Positions 1,039 through 37,454 of a stretch of DNA of 37,737 bases are shown here, in pieces (positions within the stretch are counted from its first letter, which is position 1; each line of letters opens with the position of its first letter). The notes under the pieces are model-generated. The model made no database searches. It saw only the letters and a list, made by a program, of their open reading frames with translations, and had not been told where the DNA came from. The position numbers were made by a program, and so were the translations under genes. The stretch lies in the NCBI RefSeq assembly GCF_020745735.1, contig NW_026867842.1, positions 62,001 to 99,737 of the forward strand, written 5' to 3'. Source of the DNA: Hemiscyllium ocellatum. Taxonomy: Eukaryota.

Positions 1039-3470
1039 ATTGGCAGTGAAGAAGGCTGTCTAAGAATACAATGGAATCTTGATCAACTGGGCCAGTGGGC
1101 TGAGGAATGGCAGATGGAGTTTAATTCAGATACATGTGAGTGCTATATTTTGGTAAGACACAAGACATGGGTGAGATCCCAAACAAATATTTCAGGTCAG
1201 TATATATTGTGGAGAAAGCTAGGGAATTTGGAAAAATAGTGATGTCTTGAAAAGAGACCACACACAAATGAGGAGACGCTCAAGATCTGAAAACACATAA
1301 AAGTAGTAGATAAACCCTAGGACCTGATCAGGTGTATCCCAGAACATTGTGGCAAACTAGGGAAGAGATTGCTGGGCCCCTTACTGAGATATGTGTATCA
1401 CTGACAACTATGGGTAAGGTGCTGGAGAACCAGAGAGGTTGGCTAATGTTATGCCATTATTTAAGAAAGAAAGACTGTAAGGAAAAGCCAGGGAATTATA
1501 GACCAGTGAGCCTGATGTCAGTGTTGGGTAAGATGTTGGAGTGGATTCTGTGGGATAGGATTTACATTCTTTGGATAATCAATGTGGTTTTATGCATAGG
1601 AAATCATGTCTCCTGAATTTGATTGAGGAGGTGACAAAGAAGATTTATGGAGATAGAACAATAGACATTGTCAATATGGACTTCAGTAAAGTTTTTGACA
1701 AGGTTCCACATGATAGACTGGTTAGTAAGGTTAGACCACATGGGATCCAGGGGGAGTGAGCCATTGGGATAAAAAAATTGGATTGAAGATAGGAGACAGG
1801 AGTGGTGGTAAAAGGTTGCTTTTCAGACTGGAGATCTGTGAATAGCTGTGTGCCACTAACATTGGTGCTGGATTCACTATTTTATAGAAATGATTTGGAT
1901 GTGAATATAGGAGTTACAGTAAGTTTGTAGATGATATCTAAATTGGTACGATAGTGGATAGCGAAGAAATTCATCTCAGAGTACAGCGGGACCTTCATCA
2001 GATGGGGCAATGGGCAGAGGTGTAGCATATGGAGTTCAGTTTAGATAACTGTGAGATGTTGCATTTTGGAAAGGCAACCCAGGGCAGGAGTTAGACAGTT
2101 AATGGGAGGGCCCTGTGGAGTGTTGCTGAACAAAGAGACCTCGGATTGAAGATGCAAGTGCATTATTACTTGAAAGTGGGGTCACAAGTAGACAGGGTGA
2201 TGAAGAAGGTGTTGGGTACACTTGCTTTTATTGGTCACTATTTTGAGTATAGGAGTTGGGACATCATGTTGCAGCTGTACAGGAGATTAGTGAGGCCACT
2301 TTGGCAATAATGTGAACAATCCTGATCACCTTGAAAATAGGAAGGATGCTGTTAAACTTATAAAGCTGCAGAAAAGATTTACAAGGACATGGCCAGGAAT
2401 TGGAGGGTTTGAGCTATAGGGAAAGGCTGAAGAAACTGGGTCTATTTTTCCTACAGCATCTAAGGCTTCGGGGTGACCTTATAGATGTTTATACAATCAT
2501 GAGGGGCATGGACAGGGTGTATATCCAAGGCCTTTTCTTTGGGAAAGGGAGTCCAAAACAAGATGGCATAGGTTTAAGGTGAGAGGCAAAATATTCAAAA
2601 GGGACCTGAGGGGTAACTTGTCACACAGAGGGTGGTATGTGTCTGGATCGAGCTGCCAGAGTAAGTATTGGAGGCAGATACTATTACAGCATTTAAAACG
2701 CATTGGGATGGGTACATGAATCGGAAGGGTTTTGAGGAATGTAAGCAAAATGCTGGCAAATGGGATGAGGTGATTTAGGATATCTGGTTAGTATGGACAA
2801 GTTGAACTGAAAGGTCTGTTTCCACGCTGTATGACTCCATGACGATGAGAAGCTGGAAAAGCTGAAACTTTTTATTCTGACACGTAAGAGTCTGAGGAGT
2901 GACCTTGTAAAGGTTTATAAAATCATGAGGGTCATAGAAAATGTGAATAATTCAGGAAGGAGCTGAAGTTTTGTAGAAATGGCAAAAAATATTCCTGAAG
3001 ATCCTTCCAGGGATGAGGAACATCAGTTATACAGATTGATTGGAGAATTGGGGACTGTCTTCTTTGGCGAAGGCTGAGAGGAGATTTGTTTGAGGAATTA
3101 AAACCAGGAGGGGCCTGGACAGGGTAAATAGGGAGAAAATGTTCCCAATTGAGAAAGGATTGAGACCGAGAGAACACAGATTTAAAGTAATAAGTAAAAG
3201 TAACAAAAGTGAGAGGGGGAACAACATTTTCAGCCAGTGGGTGGTTAAGGTGTGGAATGCACTGCCTAAGAGTGTGGTGGAGGCAGCTTCAATTAAAACA
3301 TTCCGAAGGGAATGAGACTGTTATTTGAAAAGGAACAATGTGCAGGGTGACAGGGAGAAGGCAGGAGAATGACACTCAGTGAATTGCTCAGTCGGAGAAC
3401 CATGACAGACAGGATGGACGGAATGGCCTCCTTGTGCACTGTAACTATTCTGTGATTGTGTGATTGAGCA
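1039..3470 (+). mobile_element. Several stacked CR1 ORF2 (RT) fragments and 3' ends
   Basis: Translations NYRPVSLMS, NMDFSKVFDKVPHDRL, YRERLKKLGLF; 3' UTR motifs; many stops and frameshifts. Confidence 0.9.
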
Positions 3471-3510
3471 GAGTTAAAGCTGGGGGAGGTGGGAGCTCGG
3501 TGTCTCACTG

Positions 3511-3542
<32 letters not shown>
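3511..3542. repeat. (TGC)10 trinucleotide microsatellite
   Basis: Directly visible. Confidence 0.97.
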
Positions 3543-3915
3543 AGGTCAGTGAGATCAGAGACTGGGACAGGGAGCCAGAGCTCACATCAAACTCTGCCCC
3601 GTGTCCGTCACACTGAGACTGGCAGGAGGCTACTCACTGATTTCACTCCATGCTGCAGGAATGGGACCACAGGCTGCAAATGGACAGAGCTCCTCCACAC
3701 GGTGAGTAAAACTGACTGACTTATATCTTGCTTCTTAAAGGGGGCAATGGAACTGAAGTGGTACGGTTGGACAACTGTTAGACACAGTGCTCCTTAATCA
3801 ACCATTTCGTTCACTGCAGCTCCCCACTAACACCTTCAACAAATCAGTAACTGTATTTTAGAAAGTGTGTTTCAGTATTGAAAGGGTTAATAACAGAGGA
3901 TTGAGGTTTACTTAC

Positions 3916-3950
3916 TCAGTCTGAGCTTGGTTCCTTTACCGAACGTGTCC
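3916..3950 (-). CDS. IGKJ: Ig light-chain (kappa-type) J segment, DTFGKGTKLRL
   Basis: FGXG motif; phase-1 splice donor A|GTAAGT at 3915; flanked by a consensus 23-RSS. Confidence 0.95.
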
Positions 3951-3989
3951 CACAGTGAGAGTTCCCAGTGCAGAGGCTGTACAAAAACC
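3951..3989 (+). other. 23-bp-spacer RSS of J
   Basis: CACAGTG 3951-3957, 23-nt spacer 3958-3980, ACAAAAACC 3981-3989; perfect consensus. Confidence 0.98.
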
Positions 3990-4421: not shown

Positions 4422-4449
4422 GGTTTTTGTATGGCTCTGTATCACTGTG
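4422..4449 (-). other. 12-bp-spacer RSS of V (cluster 1)
   Basis: Minus strand CACAGTG (4449-4443), 12-nt spacer, ACAAAAACC (4430-4422); perfect consensus. V-12/J-23 is the kappa configuration. Confidence 0.98.
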
Positions 4450-4754
4450 TTGAGCGGAGCTGCTATACCAGTTGTTCTGACAGTAATAGTCAGCGACATC
4501 CTCATTCTGAACGTTGCTGATTGTCAGGGTGTAACTGGTCCCTGATCCACTGCCGGTGAATCGCTCGGAGACTCCTGTGAATCGAGATGTTGCAGCATAG
4601 ATCAGGAGAGAGGGTTTCTGACCTTCTCGCTGCTGGTACCAACTGAGGTAGCTGCTAATGTCTTGACTGGCCGTACAGGTGAGTTTTGCGGTCTGGCCCA
4701 ATCCCACTGACAACACCGGGGGAGACTGGGTCATGATAATCTCCCCATTGATAC
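4450..4754 (-). CDS. IGKV: Ig kappa-type V exon, unrearranged, open frame ([27 protein letters not shown]...WYQQ...[17 protein letters not shown])
   Basis: Conserved Cys, Trp and YYC; FTGSGSGT; acceptor CCTCAG at 4760-4755; resembles shark kappa (NS4/type III-like) V regions. Confidence 0.96.
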
Positions 4755-4940
4755 CTGAGGGGTCAGAGAGAAACACAGTGAAGTCAGAACTGTCACAGAA
4801 AGAGCCGGTCAAATGAGAGATTGTTGGAGACACTGAGCATTCCTCTGGTTTCAGCATTTTCCCTTCAATCACAAGTCAGTGGAATTGGAGTGAAATGGAG
4901 AGCAGCTAAAGATTCAAGGTGGAAGGAGAGAGATTTGTAC

Positions 4941-4988
4941 CTGCGACACAGAATGCCAGGGGCCAGATCAGCTGGATGTGTGAATCAT
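4941..4988 (-). CDS. V leader exon, frameshifted as given (ATG ATT CAC ACA TCC AGC TGA)
   Basis: 48 nt from ATG to GT donor at 4940; 186-nt intron. Restoring one T (present in cluster 2) gives MISHIQLIWPLAFCVA+G in phase 1. Confidence 0.9.
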
Positions 4989-5046
4989 GGTGTGTGCTCC
5001 TGTCCCTGTGCCTGGTTCCTGATAAACTCTCCCTTCACTGGGCTCT

Positions 5047-5141
5047 GCTTTATAAAGCTGCAGCCTGTGAGAGTCTGACTGGGTGTTCCTCAGTATGTAA
5101 ATGGCATCAGGCAGAGAGAGCCACGTCAGCCCCTCACACTT

Positions 5142-5145
<4 letters not shown>
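5047..5145 (-). promoter_or_regulatory. V promoter of cluster 1
   Basis: TATAAA within GCTTTATAAAGC (5047-5058), octamer variant ATTTACAT (5102-5095), TGACGTGG (5128-5121), ETS-like GAGGAAGTG (5145-5137). Confidence 0.8.
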
Positions 5146-5172
<27 letters not shown>

Positions 5173-5520
5173 ATCCTTTCTTTTCTTTCTCCCTTTTCCC
5201 TTTTTTCTCTTTCTCACCCTTCTCTTGTATACGTTCTTGTTATTCGTTGACTTTCTCTCTCTTTTTCTATTTCCGTCTCCAACTCTGTCCTCTCCCAATT
5301 ATATAACCACTTCTATCTTTCCTTTTTTCCATGTATGTTTGACATTCTGTTTATCTCCCTCCCTTCTGTTTTGGTTGGTCTCTCTCTCTCTCTCTCTCTC
5401 TCTTTCTTATCATTCATTCTTCTCCTTCACTTATATTACTACCTAATTCCTCACTCATTCTCTCCTTATACCCTCAATCTCTAATTGCCTCACTCTCTCT
5501 TTGTTTCCCTCCCTCCAGTC
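5146..5520. repeat. (CT)n and pyrimidine-rich low-complexity tract
   Basis: Directly visible. Confidence 0.9.
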
Positions 5521-6465: not shown

Positions 6466-6929
6466 CCAACAAGGTCCCAAGTGGTAAAAGTTAAATACAG
6501 GTTATATCTCCTCCAAATCTAATGGATGTTAACCCTTGACACCAGGAGTATGTCTACTCCTGGAATAAAGGCCCATTTCCCACATTGACCAGGGTTTGGC
6601 CTCTCTCAGGAAGACGGTCAGATTCTTGTCAAATGAAGGGCAATTCTGTGCTGTTGGCCCATTCTTCCTGGGGACTGGTTTGGACACAAACCTCATTCCA
6701 TGAAAGCCCAGCAGAGGGAGGAGATCCTCAGGCCATCAGTATGACCTGGAGGGATAGGACAGGATCTGACCCATTGACCCATCCTATCCATTCACAACAT
6801 GTTCCAATCCTTTCCCCTCACCTTTCCCTTCCATGGTCAAGCTCCAGTTTTATTGGTATGAGGATTGGACCATCACACAGTTACTACAGAAAGGAAATGA
6901 GCCCCACACTCACTACAGTATCCATGTCC

Positions 6930-7280
6930 CACTGGACTGTCCAGTGGAGACCAGTAAGCATGGAATTCATTCCCACAGAACTCTCCAGTAGAGACCATTA
7001 AACATAGGCATCTTTGCTGCTGGAGCCTCCAATGGAGACCAGTAAATATGGGTCTATTTCCCACTGAATACTCGAGCAGAGCCTAGTTAACATGGACCTT
7101 ATTCCTACTGGGCCCTCCAATAGAAACCAGGAGAGAAAGGCCTCCATTTCTTTGAACTCTCCAGTGCAGACCAGTAAATATAGACGAGCTTCAAACTGGC
7201 TCCTCCAATACAGACCAGTAAAGATGTGACTCTTTGTGAATGGATCCTCCAATACAGACCAGTAAACAAGGATCTCATTG
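6930..7280. repeat. Degenerate 44-bp minisatellite, about 8 units; remnant continues at about 8340-8470
   Basis: ACCAGTAA-like core at 6950, 6994, 7038, 7082, 7126, 7170, 7214, 7258 (exact 44-nt period). Confidence 0.9.
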
Positions 7281-7289
7281 CAAGATTGA

Positions 7290-8310
7290 ACTTCGGAATG
7301 AGGAGCAGGAATAGGTAATCAAACCCGTTTCCTATTTAACATGATCATGGCTGAACTTAACCTCCTCTCCACTTTCCAGACGGCTACCTATTGCCCTCTA
7401 TCCTGCTTTTCATCAGAAAGATATCTGTTTCTTTCTTGAATCTGTTGATTGATTCTGCCTCCACTGTGCTTGAGGAAGGGGGTGGGGAGGGGGGGGGGAG
7501 TGGGAGGGGGGTGGAGATGATGGTGCGCACTGACATCCACAGATTCGCAACCTTCTGCGAGAAGTAGTTGGAATGGAACAGATTCCATACAGTATGAAAC
7601 CAGGCCATTCAGCCCAATAAGTCCACACCAACCCTTCAAAGAGCATTCCACCCAGAGCCATTCTGGAACCTTTTCCCTGTAACCCTATATTTCCCATGAC
7701 TAATGAATCTAACCTACACTTTCCTGGACACTATGGGTAAATTAGCATGGCCAATCCTCTGAACGTGTACATCATTAGACTGTGGGAGGAAATCAGAGCA
7801 CACAGATGAAGCTCACACAGACAGGGGGAGAATGTGCAAACTCCATTGCCTGAGGGTGGAGTCGAACCTGGGGCCCTGGCACTGTGAGGCAGCAGTGCTC
7901 ACCACTGCACCACTCTGTCACCTGTAGTTTCTCCTCATCTCAGTTTTAAACATACCTCCTCTCACTCTATGTCTATGACCTCTTGTTCGAGACTGGCCCA
8001 CAAGAGAGTACATCTGTTCAATGCTTGCCCTATCAATCTCCTTTAGCATCTTATATACTTCACTCAGATCTCCCCTTCATACAACTGAATTCCAGTGAGT
8101 ACAAGCCCTAGCTATTCAACCATTCCTCATATGGCAGCCCTTTCATCCGGGGAATCAGTCTGGTGAACATCCTCTGAACTGAATCCAGTGCCACCATATC
8201 CTTCACCAAGTAAGGAGACCACAACTGGACACAATGCTTCAGATGTGGTCTCACCAATGCCTAATAGAATTGTCACAATATTTCTTTATTTCTGTAATTC
8301 AGTCCTTTTA
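7290..8310 (-). mobile_element. CR1 3' fragments with a nested HE1-like SINE (about 7560-7922)
   Basis: Reverse-complement SINE head and V-domain (GAGAATGTGCAAACTCC; GCAGCAGTGCT); CR1 tail motifs. Confidence 0.8.
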
Positions 8311-9059: not shown

Positions 9060-9430
9060 AGATCGAGCTGAAAGGAAAGATTTGCTGGGTTATGGGGAGA
9101 GAGGGGGCAGTGGGAATAATTGGATCACTCACAGACACCACAGGTGGGGGGGGGGGTGCAGGTTTAGGACTAAATAGAGAAGGAACTTCTTCACCCAGAG
9201 GGTGGTGAATCTATGGAATTCCCTGCCCAGCGAAGTCGTTGAGGTTTCCTCAGTAAATGTTTTTAAAGCTGATTTAGGTAATTTTTTGAACAGTAAATGA
9301 ATCAAGGGTTTTGGTGAAAAGGTGGATAAGGGGGAGCTGATGCCATGAAAAGATCAGCCATGATCTTACTGAATGGCAGAGCAGCCCAAGAGGCCAGAGA
9401 GCCTGCTCCTGCTCCTGGTTTTAATGTTCT
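9060..9430 (+). mobile_element. CR1 3' UTR fragments
   Basis: TTCACCCAGAGGGTGGTGAATCTATGGAATT...GATCAGCCATGATCTTACTGAATGGC tail motifs. Confidence 0.8.
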
Positions 9431-9780
9431 TATGTGCTGTCAGATTCCAGGGAGTGCAGACAGTTCACAGTTTTCTCCCGTCTCAGTAACAAATGTGCAG
9501 CTGCTCCGAGCTCCTTCTTTCACTTCCTCACTTGGTGAAGTTTCAACCTTGCGATCTGACAGCCTTTGCAGTTATTTTTTACACTGGGGCTTTCTGCTGT
9601 GGTCAGAATCTCTAATAATAAGTGTCCAATCAGTGACAATCACAGCAGCTAAGAGCAGTCAGGACTGAGTAGCCAGGCTCACTGGGAAACACATTGGGAA
9701 GATCAAAGCCATCCCCTTCAGGTCCCGGTACAACCTCCATCCCTCTCCCTGAGCACTGTCTGCTGCTCAACCAGACTCTT
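9430..9780. promoter_or_regulatory. Conserved non-coding element, candidate B-cell enhancer (copy 1)
   Basis: Inverted homolog at 30850-31200; 96-nt core 9573-9668 has 1 mismatch; motifs CAGCTG 9498-9503, TTTCACTTCC 9518-9527, TGTGGT 9598-9603. Confidence 0.6.
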
Positions 9781-9783
9781 TAC

Positions 9784-9995
9784 AAAAACAGAATACCTCA
9801 GCAGGTCTGGCAGCATCTGGGGAAAGAAATCAGAGTTAACCTTTCAGGTCGAGTGACCCTTCCTCAGAACAGTTCTGAGAAGGTTCACGTCCCAAAATTT
9901 TAACTCTGCTTTCTCTCCACAGATGGTGCCAGACCTGCCGAGCTTTTCCAGCAATTTCTGTTTTTGTTCCTCATTTGCAGCATCTGCAGCTTTTT
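9784..9995. mobile_element. Inverted pair of Penelope-type terminal fragments forming a palindrome
   Basis: Centre CTCAGAAC-A-GTTCTGAG (9863-9879); about 90-bp related arms; hammerhead-like core in the left arm (minus strand). Confidence 0.7.
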
Positions 9996-10079
9996 CGGCT
10001 TTTATTTCATACCAGATTCCTTAAAATCTTGGCCTCATCTTTGAGGCTGATCTGAGCCCCAAATCCTCCACAGCACAGA

Positions 10080-16154: not shown

Positions 16155-18000
16155 GTTACATTTATAAAACTGTGCCACATCTTTATATAATTTTGGCTCA
16201 ATAAAACACCTGATTCTGGATGCCTGTGGACAATTGGACAATTTCCAAATCCCCACGGTCCTGTCATGGAAATCTGATGTGCTCCTCACGATATCTCCCT
16301 GTGATAGCTGGATGGTACCACGAGCCAATATCTAACCAACCATTCTTCATCTGGGGGTCCATGGAGGGGCGGTGGGGTGGGGGGGGGGTGGTCTCCACTT
16401 CCTCATCAGTGCTCCATTCTGAAGATAATAGCATTCTGAAACCCCTCCAGCCTCGACCTCAGTATGAACTGACAGTGCTCATTTATTTCATTCGGGATCT
16501 GCTTTTTGGATCTGCTGTAATTAGGGACATCATACCAACCACTCCACCTGGATTATCTTCACCCTTTTGGAAAGTTTCAGCGATCCTTTCACTTGCTGTG
16601 ATGTCACATCAACCCTTATTGATGGATTTTGTTTAACCATTGCTCTGGTTACCTCACACGAAGGAGAGAGACCAGGAACCTGTTCCTGTCATTGTTCTGT
16701 TTCTTGGCCCTCCTTTGGACATTCTGTAATTATCGGGGAAGATACTGCCTTTAATCCTGACAAAATATTCCCCAGAAGAAAATCAACTCCCTCAACAGGG
16801 AATATTTTCCCCACTCCGACAATTACTTCTCCTGATAACAAATCACATTCCAGTTGTACTTTATGAGTGGAAGTGGAATATATTCTCCACCAATCCCATT
16901 GATGAACACCTTAGAATCCATTGAGCTCTCTGGAGGGAAAATCGATTCTTTCTCCAGTAAAAGTGATTGTATTGCCCCTGTATCTCTCAGTTTGATTCTG
17001 GGTTTAGCTGAAGAAAAAGGAGTCACCATTCCTTTTGATAAAAATCCTGTCCACCTCTCATCTATTTTACAACTTCCTTTACTGATGACAGAATTCACCT
17101 CCAGCCTTTTTGTTATAGTTACAGCTACAACCTGCTCCGTGGGATTATCTGTTTGCATTCCCTCTTCTGACTCATTTTTACTAACTCCCATAAATCTCCT
17201 GGGTCTTACCTCACAGCTTCCAACATTCCATACGCACATGGCCCACCTTATTCCAAGAGAATCGTTTCAACTTCTGATCATCGCTTCCAGCCTCAGCAAT
17301 TTCTTTCTTAATCTGAAGAGTAGTTCTTGGGCAGGTCCCTCCTGTCCATTCTCTCCCCTGTCTACCTGCCTTCCACACACACTCCCAATTTTTATTTTTC
17401 TCCCATTTCTGGGCCTGATGGGAAAAGGTTTCTGGATTAATCTCCCATCAGGTGACTTCTCCACCTCCTGATGCTGCTTGGCTTGTTGTGCTCTTCCAGC
17501 CTCCTGTTTGTCGACTTTGGATTCCAGCATCTGCAAGGTTTTGGCTTTAATGAAGACTATAATCATTAACCATTCTAGCTGCTTGTCATGCTGTTCTTCC
17601 CCTTCAGGCTTTTACATGAATTCTGATTCTAGAAGGGAAGAAAGTTTTAAATCCTTCTCAGAGAATAATTTCTCCGACAGCATTGTAAGTATTCTCAGCT
17701 GTTAATGCTCTATCCACCTGTCAACATTATTTTGCTGAATTCTCTCAAACTCAGTAGAAGTTTGTGGAGGCTGTTTCTGTAAGTTCTGAAACATCTGTCT
17801 GTTTGTTTCTGGGATCGATGCATATGTGCTTTTCACCTTTTCACTTCCTTGTGATCCTGAGAATGTTCCTCTGGCAGGGATGTAGAAACTTCTTGTGCTT
17901 CCCAAGTTAATTTTGCATGGGCAAACTCCATTGTTTTTCCTCGCCTCACTTGTTTAAATATCTTCTCAAAAGGCATGAAAAATGTCTCCACCTCCTTCTC
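16155..18000 (-). mobile_element. Gmr1-like Gypsy LTR-retrotransposon remnant: gag (SCAN-like capsid), Zn knuckle, protease, then integrase N-terminus
   Basis: EVETFFMPFEKI...FDRW-like gag; W(C)NKVGHVRMECWK knuckle; LRDTGAIQSLL protease; CYYLQNGALMRKWRP...VPSSYHREI.GAH...KDVAQFYKC integrase zinc-finger region. Confidence 0.8.
17410..17535 (-). mobile_element. Penelope-type terminal fragment inserted in the Gypsy gag
   Basis: GATGCTGCTTGGCTTGTTGTGCTCTTCCAGC...GATTCCAGCATCTGCA is similar to the other Penelope-type copies; no hammerhead core. Confidence 0.6.
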
Positions 18001-30849: not shown

Positions 30850-31200
30850 TTGTAAAGGGTCTGGTTGTGCAGCAGACCCCCAGGGAGAGGGATGGAGTTT
30901 GGAGCAGGAGATGAAGAGGATGGCTTTGATCTTCCCAATATGTTACACAGTGAGTCCGGGCTTTTCAGTCCTGACTGCTCTTAGCTGCTGTGATTGTCAC
31001 TGATTAGACACTTATTATTAGAGATTCTGACCACAGCAGAAAGCCCCAGTGTAAAAAATAGTTGCAAGACTGTCAGAGCACAAGGTTGAAAATTCACCAA
31101 AAGAGGAAGTGAAAGAAGGAGCTCGGAGCAGCTGGGTGTTTGTTACTGAGAGGGAGAAAACTGTGAACTGTCTGCTCTCCCTGGAACCTGACAGCACAGG
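30850..31200. promoter_or_regulatory. Conserved non-coding element, candidate enhancer (copy 2)
   Basis: Core 30965-31060; ACCACA 31030-31035; GGAAGTGAAA 31105-31114; CAGCTG 31129-31134. Confidence 0.6.
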
Positions 31201-31479
31201 AGGCTGGTTCTGGGATTTTTCTTTTTCAGAAACAGCACATTGATGGAAAAGTGTCAGTCACTCTCTCACAAACACACACGCCTGCACTTCGAGATTAGAA
31301 ACAGAATCCAGCAGCAGCTCTGTCTCCAAGCTGTGAAACCTGCACAGAATTGTTCCCTCATTCAGTTTTAAACTGGCAGGATAGACCAAGCAGGGAAAGC
31401 AACACAGTGGTGTGTACAGTCAGAAGGGAGTTGCCCTGGGAGTCCTCACCATTAACTATGGAACCCATGAAGCCTCATG

Positions 31480-34540: not shown

Positions 34541-35229
34541 CTACTTGTCTGAATTGGAAAGTGCAATGAATAGGAGGCCCATGTTTACTGATTCTCTTGG
34601 AGGATCAAATCAGAAGTAGGCCAATGTTTACTGGTTCTGTTGGAGATCCAGCAGGGAAGAAGCCATATTTACTGGTCTCTTCTGGGAACTTCAGTGGAAG
34701 GAAGCCCATGTCTCTCTATCGAGCAGCCTTGTGAACTGAATTCCATGTTTAGTGGACTCTGTTGGAGAGTCCAGTACGTCATGAACACATGGTGGGTATG
34801 GGATCAGTTCCTTTCTGTTGTAACTGTGTGATGCTCCAGCCCTCATCCCAGTCAAACAGCCTGATTCAGAGACTGATCATGGAAGGGGAAGGAAAGGGAA
34901 AAGGATTGGAACATGTTGTGGATGGACAGGCTGGGTCACTGGTCAGAAATTGTCCTTTTCCTCCAGCTCACACTGATGGCCTGAGGATCTCCTCTCTCTG
35001 CTGGGCCTTCATGGAATGAGGTCCAAACCAAACCAGTCCCCAGTGAGAATAGGGCAACAGAACAGAACTGCCTTTCATTTGACAAGAATCTGTCCATCGT
35101 CCTGAATGAGGTCAAACCCTGGTCAGTGTGAGAAATGGGGAGTTACTCCAGGAAAAGACATGTTTTGGGTCAAGGGTTAACATCCATTAGTGGGGCAGAG
35201 CAGAGGGAGATTTATCCTGAATTCAACTG

Positions 35230-36741: not shown

Positions 36742-36772
<31 letters not shown>

Positions 36773-36773
36773 A

Positions 36774-36872
36774 GAGGAAGTGTGAGGGGCTGACGTGGCT
36801 CTCTCTGCCTGATGCCATTTACATACTGAGGAACACCCAGTCAGACTCTCACAGGCTGCAGCTTTATAAAGC
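36774..36872 (+). promoter_or_regulatory. V promoter of cluster 2
   Basis: GAGGAAGTG 36774-36782, TGACGTGG 36791-36798, ATTTACAT 36817-36824, TATAAA 36865-36870; identical to cluster 1. Confidence 0.8.
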
Positions 36873-36930
36873 AGAGCCCAGTGAAGGGAGAGTTTATCAG
36901 GAACCAGGCACAGGGACAGGAGCACACACC

Positions 36931-36978
36931 ATGATTTCACACATCCAGCTGATCTGGCCCTGGAATTCTGTGTCGCAG
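36931..36978 (+). pseudogene. V leader exon with a 1-nt deletion (MISHIQLIWP, then shifted; donor in phase 0)
   Basis: GGCCC instead of GGCCCC; GT donor at 36979; 186-nt intron to 37164. Confidence 0.88.
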
Positions 36979-37164
36979 GTACAAATCTCTCTCCTTCCAC
37001 CTTGAATCTTTAGCTGCTCTCCATTTCACTCCAATTCCACTGACTTGTGATTGAAGGGAAAATGCTGAAACCAGAGGAATGCTCAGTGTCTCCAACAATC
37101 TCTCATTTGACAGGCTCTTTCTGTGAAAGTTCTGACTTCACTGTGTTTCTCTCTGATCCCTCAG

Positions 37165-37454
37165 GTATCAGTGAGGACATCATCATGACCTAGTCTCCCC
37201 CACTGCTGTCAGTGGGACTGGGCCAGACCGCAACCATCACCTGTAGGGCCATTAGCAGCTACCTTGCTTGGTACCAGTAGCGAGAAGGTCAGAAACCCTC
37301 TCTCCCGATCTATGCTGCAGCAACTCAACTCACAGGAAGTCTCCGAGCAATTCACCGGCAGTGGATCAGGGACCAGTTTCACCCTGACAATCAGCAACAT
37401 TCAGAATGAGGATGTTGCTGACTATTGACTGTCAGCAGCATTACAGCTGGCCTT
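37165..37454 (+). pseudogene. IGKV: Ig kappa-type V pseudogene
   Basis: TAG stops at 37191 and 37278; 9-nt CDR1 deletion at 37250/37251; +1 insertions near 37337 and 37427; CDR3 start CQQHYSWP. Confidence 0.95.

What the first reader, a model, noticed from the sequence alone, without database searches (positions are those of the whole stretch)
9430..9780. Candidate upstream light-chain enhancer with ETS-IRF composite, E-box and RUNX motifs conserved in both arms
Seen: non-repetitive block about 4.5 kb (arm 1) and 5.8 kb (arm 2) upstream of each leader. Its 96-nt core (9573-9668 vs 30965-31060) has one mismatch while neighbouring DNA is much more diverged. Both copies keep GGAAGTGAAA, CAGCTG and TGTGGT. 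Known: GGAAnnGAAA is the PU.1/Spi-B-IRF4/8 composite element of mammalian Ig lambda and kappa 3' enhancers; E-proteins and RUNX are B-lineage regulators. Inference: each cluster carries its own enhancer 5' of V, rather than in the J-C intron or 3' of C as in mammals.
Basis: partly seen in the sequence, partly recalled or inferred. Interest (0 to 1): 0.74.

Follow-up and report, generated by a model that had tools for sequence, protein, structure and literature searches.

The report
Conserved upstream block of shark kappa genes
A 350-base non-coding block a few kilobases upstream of each shark antibody kappa light-chain gene changes two to three times more slowly than its surroundings and carries the binding-site set of bird and mammal light-chain enhancers, so it is a credible but untested candidate on-switch for these genes.

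Summary
The window holds two divergently oriented kappa V-J clusters. The block 9431-9785 (- strand) matches 30850-31201 (+ strand) at about 89%, while colinear flanks match at 76-81%. The 96-nt core differs at one base (9627).

A profile of the block finds only these two copies in the window. It finds four more in about 122 kb of DNA fetched from Chiloscyllium punctatum and Stegostoma tigrinum. Every copy with a visible V gene lies 2.4-6.4 kb upstream of a kappa V, in the V-sense orientation.

Among the four closer copies the block diverges 0.33-0.58 times as fast as its flanks. GGAAGTGAAA is kept in 5 of 6 copies and CAGCTG in 6 of 6, always 24 nt apart start to start. TGTGGT is kept in 5 of 6.

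I found no sign of a repeat, a coding exon or a structured RNA. The best reading is a cluster-linked cis-regulatory element, most likely a B-cell enhancer (about 50%).

Caveats:
- The composite site and the E-box lie outside the 96-nt core.
- The arm 2 V is a pseudogene, and the arm 1 leader is one base out of frame.
- One C. punctatum pseudogene cluster lacks the block.

The scan has noted this same module before on other pieces of this genome.

The parts
9431..9785 (-). Conserved block, arm 1 copy, written in the sense of its V gene. It lies 4.4 kb upstream of the leader ATG.
   Evidence: nhmmer profile hit, E 2e-127; blastn 89.3% to the arm 2 copy; 94.9% to C. punctatum L001 and 89.9% to Stegostoma L004.
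30850..31201 (+). Conserved block, arm 2 copy. It lies 5.7 kb upstream of the arm 2 leader ATG.
   Evidence: nhmmer profile hit, E 1e-116; alignment A2.
9573..9668 (-). 96-nt core, arm 1. The arm 2 partner is 30965-31060. The sub-stretch 9620-9576 is identical over 45 nt even in the distant C. punctatum cluster L002a.
   Evidence: One mismatch between the arms, at 9627. A 45-nt identical run inside a 74-77% identical alignment has P about 1e-4 to 7e-4.
9518..9527 (-). Ets-IRF composite motif GGAAGTGAAA, arm 1.
   Evidence: Kept in 5 of 6 copies; L002b has GGAAATGAAG.
31105..31114 (+). Ets-IRF composite motif GGAAGTGAAA, arm 2.
9498..9503 (.). E-box CAGCTG, arm 1, separated from the composite motif by a 14-nt spacer.
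   Evidence: Present in 6 of 6 copies. The start-to-start distance from the composite motif is 24 nt in the five copies with an exact composite motif, and the spacer is also 14 nt in L002b, whose composite motif is degenerate.
31129..31134 (.). E-box CAGCTG, arm 2.
9598..9603 (+). RUNX-type motif TGTGGT, arm 1, inside the core.
   Evidence: Kept in 5 of 6 copies.
31030..31035 (-). RUNX-type motif, arm 2 (reads ACCACA on the + strand).
9612..9621 (.). AT-rich match to the MEF2 consensus YTAWWWWTAR, arm 1. The arm 2 match is 31012-31021.
   Evidence: The consensus is met in arm 1, arm 2 and L001 only (3 of 6), so it is not a conserved feature of the module.
9626..9630 (+). CCAAT box, arm 1 only in this window. 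The single core mismatch (9627) removes it in arm 2.
   Evidence: Present in arm 1, L001 and L004 and absent in arm 2, L002a and L002b.
4443..4988 (-). Arm 1 kappa V gene: leader ATG 4988-4986, leader exon to 4941, V exon 4754-4450, heptamer 4449-4443, 12-nt spacer, nonamer 4430-4422.
   Evidence: Sequence read; ORF; V domain 89% identical to C. punctatum kappa chains. The ATG is 1 nt out of frame relative to the canonical MISHIQLIWPLAFCVAG leader: a T run of 2 where other clusters have 3.
3912..3989 (-). Arm 1 J segment with a 23-spacer signal: nonamer 3989-3981, heptamer 3957-3951, J coding about 3950-3912.
36931..37450 (+). Arm 2 kappa V pseudogene.
   Evidence: Two in-frame TAG codons, a 9-nt CDR1 deletion, two 1-nt insertions, a 1-nt leader deletion and a lost heptamer.

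Best explanation
The block is a cis-regulatory module that belongs to each kappa V-J-C cluster of orectolobiform sharks, most likely a B-lineage enhancer.

Proposed mechanism (inferred, not shown). A PU.1/Spi-B-type Ets factor and IRF4/8 bind cooperatively to GGAAGTGAAA. An E-protein binds the CAGCTG box that sits 14 nt further on. RUNX/CBF and other factors bind the invariant 45-nt stretch about 75 nt upstream of the composite site. The complex then acts over 2-6 kb on the highly conserved V promoter, opening the cluster for V-J joining and driving expression.

A one-V cluster keeps its 5' DNA after V-J joining. An enhancer can therefore sit upstream of V here, whereas multi-V loci of tetrapods need theirs in the J-C intron or 3' of C.

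Shown: the conservation, the linkage to kappa V genes, the fixed orientation, the motif retention and the fixed spacing. Inferred: factor binding, enhancer activity and the target gene.
For: (1) The block is discrete and cluster-linked. A profile of it finds 2 copies in the 37.7-kb window and 4 in about 122 kb of fetched shark DNA. Every copy with a visible V gene lies upstream of a kappa V in V-sense orientation.
(2) It evolves more slowly than colinear flanks:
- arm 1 vs L001: 94.9% vs 84.7%
- arm 1 vs Stegostoma L004: 89.9% vs 78.7%
- arm 2 vs L001: 89.1% vs 78.6%
- L001 vs L004: 89.4% vs 79.4%
The p-values for these four pairs run from 1e-5 to 1e-8, and the divergence ratios across all closer pairs tested are 0.33-0.58.
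(3) In a 100-nt profile of the whole 5' region, the block is the only stretch apart from the promoter-leader-intron that aligns in every locus with enough upstream DNA. It is also the best conserved.
(4) The pairwise tree order is the same in block and flanks (arm 1 nearest L001). The high identity is therefore not a conversion patch between the two arms.
(5) Conservation is patchy in a footprint-like way. A 45-nt run is identical between the arms and the distant L002a copy (P about 1e-4). Motif columns are 18 of 22 invariant against 166 of 345 others (p = 0.003).
(6) The composite motif and the E-box keep an exact 24-nt start-to-start distance in the five copies with an exact composite motif, and L002b, whose composite motif is degenerate, keeps the same 14-nt spacer. 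RUNX to composite motif is 74-76 nt.
(7) The distance to V varies from 2.4 to 6.4 kb through transposon insertions that spare the block.
(8) Chicken, human and mouse Ig-lambda enhancers share an E-box and NF-kB, MEF2 and PU.1-IRF4 sites, and mutating the PU.1-IRF4 site cripples them (PMC3972084).
Against:
- Against the distant C. punctatum copies L002a and L002b, the block is no better conserved than the alignable flank pieces (divergence ratio 0.9-1.1). That flank figure is biased upward, because only alignable pieces are counted.
- L002b has degenerate composite and RUNX sites.
- The arm 2 V is a pseudogene, yet its block is as well kept as its V exon. So part of the signal may be shared history rather than present selection.
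- L005, a pseudogene cluster, lacks the block.
- The motifs are short and were chosen after the fact. The composite motif alone occurs 5 times in the window against 2.4 expected.
- Only one shark order could be sampled.
Confidence: 0.5

Rival explanations
1. The block is constrained regulatory DNA of another kind. It could be an upstream promoter for sterile (germline) transcripts through the cluster. It could be a hypermutation-targeting element like the chicken DIVAC sequences. Or it could be a boundary or silencer element.
For: The same conservation and linkage evidence applies. Ig enhancers with E-box, MEF2, NF-kB and PU.1-IRF4 sites target somatic hypermutation largely independently of transcription (PMC3972084). 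In three copies the core has a CCAAT box about 45 nt upstream of an A-rich TATA-like stretch.
Against: The CCAAT box is lost in arm 2, L002a and L002b. No gene model starts or has an exon at the block in L001, L002 or the RNA-supported Stegostoma annotation of L004. These roles overlap with 'enhancer' and cannot be separated by sequence alone.
Confidence: 0.2
2. The block has no function. It is old unique DNA that happens to change slowly, or that is homogenised among clusters by gene conversion, and its motifs are chance matches.
For: The arm 2 block is conserved although its V is a pseudogene. The promoter-leader-intron tract is 96-100% identical among clusters, which shows that patchy homogenisation or strong constraint exists in these loci. 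Against the distant L002 copies the block is not clearly better kept than its alignable flanks. Short motifs are common.
Against: Conversion within a genome does not raise identity between species, yet the block is about 90% identical to Stegostoma against 79% for flanks. Block and flanks give the same order of relatedness. Conservation inside the block concentrates in discrete islands that coincide with the motifs. Transposons have landed on both sides of the block but not inside it in any of the six copies.
Confidence: 0.2
3. The block is an exon or a small RNA gene of another transcript.
For: A 107-codon ORF (9345-9668, + strand) crosses it. An 8-bp inverted repeat, CTGCTGTG / CACAGCAG, lies in the core.
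Against: The copies differ by 1- and 2-nt indels that break any reading frame. Rfam gives no hit at the gathering threshold, and only a chance-level snoRNA hit outside the block at E about 1. Folding z-scores are -0.3 and 0.0. The covariation term is unfavourable, and L002b breaks the stem without compensation. No called gene overlaps the block in three annotated loci.
Confidence: 0.05
4. The block is a fragment of a transposable element or another dispersed repeat.
For: The window is full of LINE, Penelope and SINE debris, and the block is flanked by such debris in arm 1.
Against: There are only two copies in the window and none elsewhere in the fetched loci, even at E up to 10. The known transposon families in the same DNA recur many times and in both orientations. 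The block always has the same orientation and the same neighbours.
Confidence: 0.05

Closest known systems
Ig-lambda enhancers of chicken, human and mouse (cIgλE, hIgλE, mouse Eλ2-4 / Eλ3-1)
   Same: Both are compact modules of a few hundred bp with a PU.1-IRF4 composite site and a CASSTG-type E-box downstream of it. PMC3972084 reports conserved E-box, NF-kB, MEF2 and PU.1-IRF4 motifs, and in mammals an extra E-box about 50 bp downstream of the PU.1 site. From memory, unchecked: the shark decamer GGAAGTGAAA is the same as the mouse lambda-B core.
   Different: The position differs: 5' of V rather than 3' of C. The shark E-box starts 24 nt after the start of the composite site, not about 50 bp from it. 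The MEF2 consensus is met in only 3 of 6 copies. The kB-like GGGGCTTTCT misses the consensus by one base. No sequence homology was tested and no activity is known.
Mouse Ig-kappa 3' enhancer (κE3')
   Same: It has a PU.1-IRF4 composite site plus E-box and NF-kB sites (PMC3972084, legend of its Figure S5). From memory, unchecked: IRF4 (Pip) and E47 bind adjacent sites there and synergise.
   Different: It lies 3' of C-kappa and serves a locus with many V genes, rather than one V per cluster. No homology has been shown.
Enhancers of teleost cluster-type light-chain genes (Atlantic cod; recalled from Bengten et al. 2000, not retrievable in the paper library)
   Same: They are enhancers that belong to individual V-J-C clusters in a fish with a multi-cluster organisation.
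   Different: As I recall, the cod elements lie 3' of C and between clusters. I could not check their sequences or motif sets here.

Membership tests
Ets-IRF-composite-containing Ig light-chain enhancers (λ, κ3') | An Ets-IRF composite element GGAANNGAAA | tested here: met
   GGAAGTGAAA is present in 5 of 6 copies from three genomes. L002b has GGAAATGAAG.
Ets-IRF-composite-containing Ig light-chain enhancers (λ, κ3') | An E-protein E-box (CASSTG) close to the composite site | tested here: met
   CAGCTG is present in 6 of 6 copies, always after a 14-nt spacer.
Ets-IRF-composite-containing Ig light-chain enhancers (λ, κ3') | MEF2 and NF-kB sites, as conserved in the chicken, human and mouse λ enhancers | tested here: inconclusive
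   The MEF2 consensus YTAWWWWTAR is met in 3 of 6 copies. No exact GGGRNWYYCC is present. The kB-like GGGGCTTTCT has one mismatch (PMC3972084).
Ets-IRF-composite-containing Ig light-chain enhancers (λ, κ3') | Location in the J-C intron or 3' of C | tested here: not met
   Wherever the V gene is in view, the copy lies 2.4-6.4 kb 5' of the leader.
Ets-IRF-composite-containing Ig light-chain enhancers (λ, κ3') | B-cell-specific enhancer activity and open chromatin | not testable with these tools
Ets-IRF-composite-containing Ig light-chain enhancers (λ, κ3') | Sequence homology to the tetrapod enhancers | not tested
   No tetrapod enhancer sequence was available from a tool. Only the motif grammar was compared, through PMC3972084.
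Transposable element or dispersed repeat | Many copies in unrelated contexts and in both orientations | tested here: not met
   The profile search at E up to 10 finds 6 copies in about 160 kb, and all five whose V gene is in view lie upstream of kappa V genes in V-sense orientation. A whole-genome census was not possible.
Structured non-coding RNA | A match to a known family, stability above shuffled sequence, or compensatory changes | tested here: not met
   Rfam gives no hit. Folding z-scores are -0.31 and 0.03. The covariation term is +1.81, with broken pairs in L002b.
Protein-coding exon | A reading frame kept among copies | tested here: not met
   1- and 2-nt indels occur between copies inside the block.

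The most novel reading that the evidence does not exclude
The block is the light-chain enhancer of cartilaginous fish. Under this reading it preserves an ancestral site grammar: an AT-rich MEF2-like site, a kB-like site and a RUNX site, then a PU.1-IRF composite site, then an E-box. Tetrapod lambda and kappa 3' enhancers inherited that grammar, but here it sits 5' of V, one per cluster. It would both switch on a single cluster per B cell and target somatic hypermutation to it, acting like a DIVAC element. That would place the Ig enhancer code at the origin of jawed-vertebrate antibody genes.
Probability: 0.18. Interest if true: 0.8.

Novelty: new variant of a known kind. Interest (0 to 1): 0.58.

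Why it matters
To my knowledge, no enhancer of an antibody gene has been defined in cartilaginous fish, and three full-text searches found none. How a shark B cell activates only a few of its many small Ig clusters is an open question. The heavy-chain exclusion paper proposes infrequent formation of a promoter-enhancer complex, but no enhancer is known (PMC2435157).

A short, well-delimited candidate with testable sites makes that question directly approachable through ATAC-seq, reporter assays and site mutation. It would also show whether the PU.1-IRF plus E-protein logic of tetrapod light-chain enhancers predates the split of cartilaginous and bony vertebrates.

Tried and rejected
- **Reads.** I could not run read laying, check expression, measure copy number from depth, or check the arm 1 leader T run.
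- **Other shark orders.** The look-up of encoding contigs returned no DNA for the chromosome-level assemblies of C. punctatum, Hemiscyllium, Cetorhinus and Scyliorhinus, because the files were too large. Only C. punctatum (older assembly) and Stegostoma could be compared.
- **Loci with too little upstream DNA.** L003 and L006 hold too little sequence upstream of V.
- **Earlier findings by sequence.** The search of earlier findings by sequence returned nothing.
- **Gene conversion between the two arms as the cause of the near-identical core.** Rejected. The core is equally conserved in L001 and Stegostoma, and arm 1 is nearer to L001 than to arm 2 in both block and flanks.
- **Structured RNA, coding exon, transposon.** All rejected.
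- **CCAAT box and MEF2 site as parts of the conserved module.** Rejected. Each is kept in only 3 of 6 copies.
- **Papers.** I found no paper on a shark or skate Ig enhancer.

Full report
**What is in the window**

The window is an inverted duplication of two shark kappa-type light-chain clusters placed head-to-head.

Arm 1 runs on the - strand. Its leader ATG is at 4988-4986 and its V exon at 4754-4450. A canonical heptamer, 12-nt spacer and nonamer follow, and a J segment with a 23-nt spacer signal lies at about 3989-3912. Arm 2 runs on the + strand from about 36931.

The V domain is 89% identical to annotated kappa chains of Chiloscyllium punctatum. It is 77-85% identical to those of Hemiscyllium, nurse shark, basking shark and catshark.

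The arm 2 V is a pseudogene. It has two in-frame TAG codons, a 9-nt CDR1 deletion, two 1-nt insertions, a leader deletion and a lost heptamer. Arm 1 is intact except that its ATG is one base out of frame with the canonical leader MISHIQLIWPLAFCVAG, because a T run has 2 bases instead of 3.

**The observation**

- blastn aligns 9433-9786 with 31198-30849 at 89.3% over 355 nt. The colinear neighbours reach only 76-81%.
- The 96-nt core, 9573-9668 versus 30965-31060, has a single mismatch at 9627.
- GGAAGTGAAA is at 9518-9527 (-) and 31105-31114 (+).
- CAGCTG is at 9498-9503 and 31129-31134.
- TGTGGT is at 9598-9603 and 31030-31035.

The composite site and the E-box lie outside the near-identical core. 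The single core mismatch destroys a CCAAT box that arm 1 has.

**Is it a repeat, an exon or an RNA?**

It is not a repeat as far as I could sample. A profile built from the copies finds only the two copies in the window, even at E up to 10. It finds none elsewhere in the fetched loci apart from those upstream of kappa V genes. The true transposon families in the same DNA recur many times and in both orientations.

It is not a coding exon. The copies differ by 1- and 2-nt indels, so no reading frame is kept.

It is not a recognisable RNA gene. Rfam gives nothing at the gathering threshold and only a chance-level hit outside the block at E about 1. Folding z-scores are -0.3 and 0.0. The alignment fold has an unfavourable covariation term, and the most distant copy has uncompensated breaks.

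No called gene overlaps the block in three annotated loci.

**Related loci**

Chromosome-level assemblies gave no DNA. The older C. punctatum assembly and Stegostoma tigrinum did.

| Locus | Species | Block position | Distance to leader |
|---|---|---|---|
| L001 | C. punctatum | 3264-3617 | 6.4 kb |
| L002a | C. punctatum | 4945-5296 | 4.7 kb |
| L002b | C. punctatum | 993-1356, opposite strand | V outside the locus |
| L004 | S. tigrinum | 7295-7632 | 2.4 kb |

L002a sits upstream of an intact, germline-joined V-J kappa gene. L002b is 3.6 kb away from it on the other strand, so L002 holds another head-to-head pair. In the five copies with V in view, the block has the same orientation relative to V. 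The differing distances come from transposon insertions that spare the block.

One C. punctatum cluster, L005, lacks the block. Its colinearity with arm 2 stops 113 nt from where the block should end, at a transposon junction. Its V is a pseudogene with frameshifts and a 22-nt deletion.

**Constraint**

Among the four closer copies the block diverges at 0.33-0.58 of the rate of its colinear flanks.

| Pair | Block identity | Flank identity | p |
|---|---|---|---|
| arm 1 vs L001 | 94.9% | 84.7% | 9e-9 |
| arm 1 vs L004 | 89.9% | 78.7% | 9e-7 |
| arm 2 vs L001 | 89.1% | 78.6% | 4e-6 |
| L001 vs L004 | 89.4% | 79.4% | 1e-5 |

In a 100-nt profile of the whole 5' region, the block is the best-kept non-coding stretch apart from the promoter-leader-intron tract. 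It is also the only one that aligns in every locus with enough upstream DNA.

The order of relatedness is the same in block and flanks, with arm 1 nearest L001. A conversion patch between the two arms therefore does not explain the near-identical core. The core is simply conserved in all close copies.

Against the distant L002 copies, overall block identity (71-80%) is no higher than that of the alignable flank pieces. That comparison is biased, because unalignable flank is not counted. Even so, a 45-nt stretch (9620-9576) is identical between both arms and L002a, with P about 1e-4 to 7e-4.

**Motifs**

- The composite site is kept in 5 of 6 copies, CAGCTG in 6 of 6 and the RUNX site in 5 of 6.
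- The composite site and the E-box are 24 nt apart start to start in the five copies with an exact composite site. L002b, where that site is degenerate, keeps the same 14-nt spacer. RUNX to composite site is 74-76 nt.
- The 22 motif columns are 18 invariant, against 166 of 345 other block columns (p = 0.003).
- All three motifs fall together in only 4 of 2866 350-nt windows of the remaining DNA.

These figures overstate significance, because the motifs were chosen after reading the sequence. The composite motif alone is not rare: 5 occurrences in the window against 2.4 expected. The MEF2 consensus and the CCAAT box are each kept in only 3 of 6 copies, so I do not count them as part of the module.

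**Interpretation**

The best reading (about 0.5) is a cluster-linked enhancer. It would use the Ets-IRF composite site and the adjacent E-box, with RUNX and unidentified factors on the invariant 45-nt stretch, and act on the V promoter 2-6 kb away.

A one-V cluster does not lose 5' DNA when V joins J, so an upstream position is workable here. That position is the main difference from tetrapod light-chain enhancers.

Chicken, human and mouse lambda enhancers share an E-box and NF-kB, MEF2 and PU.1-IRF4 sites, and depend on the PU.1-IRF4 site. The same elements also target somatic hypermutation (PMC3972084). A hypermutation-targeting or germline-promoter role is therefore a live rival (0.2).

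A non-functional, slowly changing segment remains possible (0.2). The arm 2 V is dead while its block is well kept, and the promoter-leader-intron tract shows that patchy homogenisation or strong constraint occurs in these loci. Exon, RNA and transposon readings are unlikely (0.05 each).

**Novelty and earlier notes**

Three full-text searches found no described Ig enhancer in cartilaginous fish. The shark heavy-chain exclusion paper invokes a promoter-enhancer complex without a known enhancer (PMC2435157).

The scan has already noted this same module on other pieces of this genome, in notes s1-228462, s1-216793, s1-228455, s1-223324 and s1-219793. Follow-ups there reached a similar conclusion. 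My tests on this window and on independently fetched loci agree with them.

My tests add four points. The composite site and E-box are outside the near-identical core. Both V genes in this window are damaged. One pseudogene cluster lacks the block. And constraint is clear only among the closer copies.

Noticed in passing
window 4800-5150 (arm 1) and about 36770-37120 (arm 2): The promoter-leader-intron tract is 96-100% identical between the arms and among C. punctatum clusters, and 92-96% identical to Stegostoma. That is clearly higher than the V exon itself (65-95%). It includes an octamer-like ATTTACAT and a TATA-like TTTATAAA. It suggests either strong constraint on the leader intron or recurrent homogenisation.
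   Followed up: partly
window 36931-37450: The arm 2 V is a pseudogene: two TAG codons, a 9-nt CDR1 deletion, two 1-nt insertions, a 1-nt leader deletion and a lost heptamer. Each arm's leader has a different 1-nt homopolymer deletion. The arm 1 deletion (T run at about 4984) is its only defect and could be an assembly slip.
   Followed up: partly
window 6520-6970 (arm 1) and 34733-35190 (arm 2): A second colinear island lies 1.5-2 kb upstream of the leader. It aligns at 75-92% in arm 2, L001, L002a, L003, L005 and L006. In Stegostoma L004 no alignment covers it in the profile. It could be another regulatory piece or an old shared insertion.
   Followed up: no
L002:993-5296 and L002:9839-11198: The C. 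punctatum contig BEZZ01000502 carries a germline-joined V-J kappa gene with an intact 237-aa product, P0044. It also carries two copies of the block, head-to-head and only 3.6 kb apart. The divergent-pair layout seen in the window therefore recurs in another cluster family.
   Followed up: partly
L005:7659-8327 and L005:14270-14850: A C. punctatum cluster whose V is a pseudogene (22-nt deletion removing the FR2 Trp, plus frameshifts) lacks the block. A transposon sits exactly where colinearity with arm 2 stops, 113 nt from the expected end of the block.
   Followed up: partly
window 9787-10010 and 9300-9430: Transposon-derived insertions abut both ends of the arm 1 block. They are shared with C. 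punctatum L001 but absent from arm 2, L002 and Stegostoma. The arm 1 lineage is therefore closer to L001 than to arm 2, and the inverted duplication is older than that split.
   Followed up: partly
window 17839-17848: A third exact GGAAGTGAAA lies in the transposon-rich middle of the window, with no similarity to the block around it. This shows that the decamer alone is not diagnostic.
   Followed up: no
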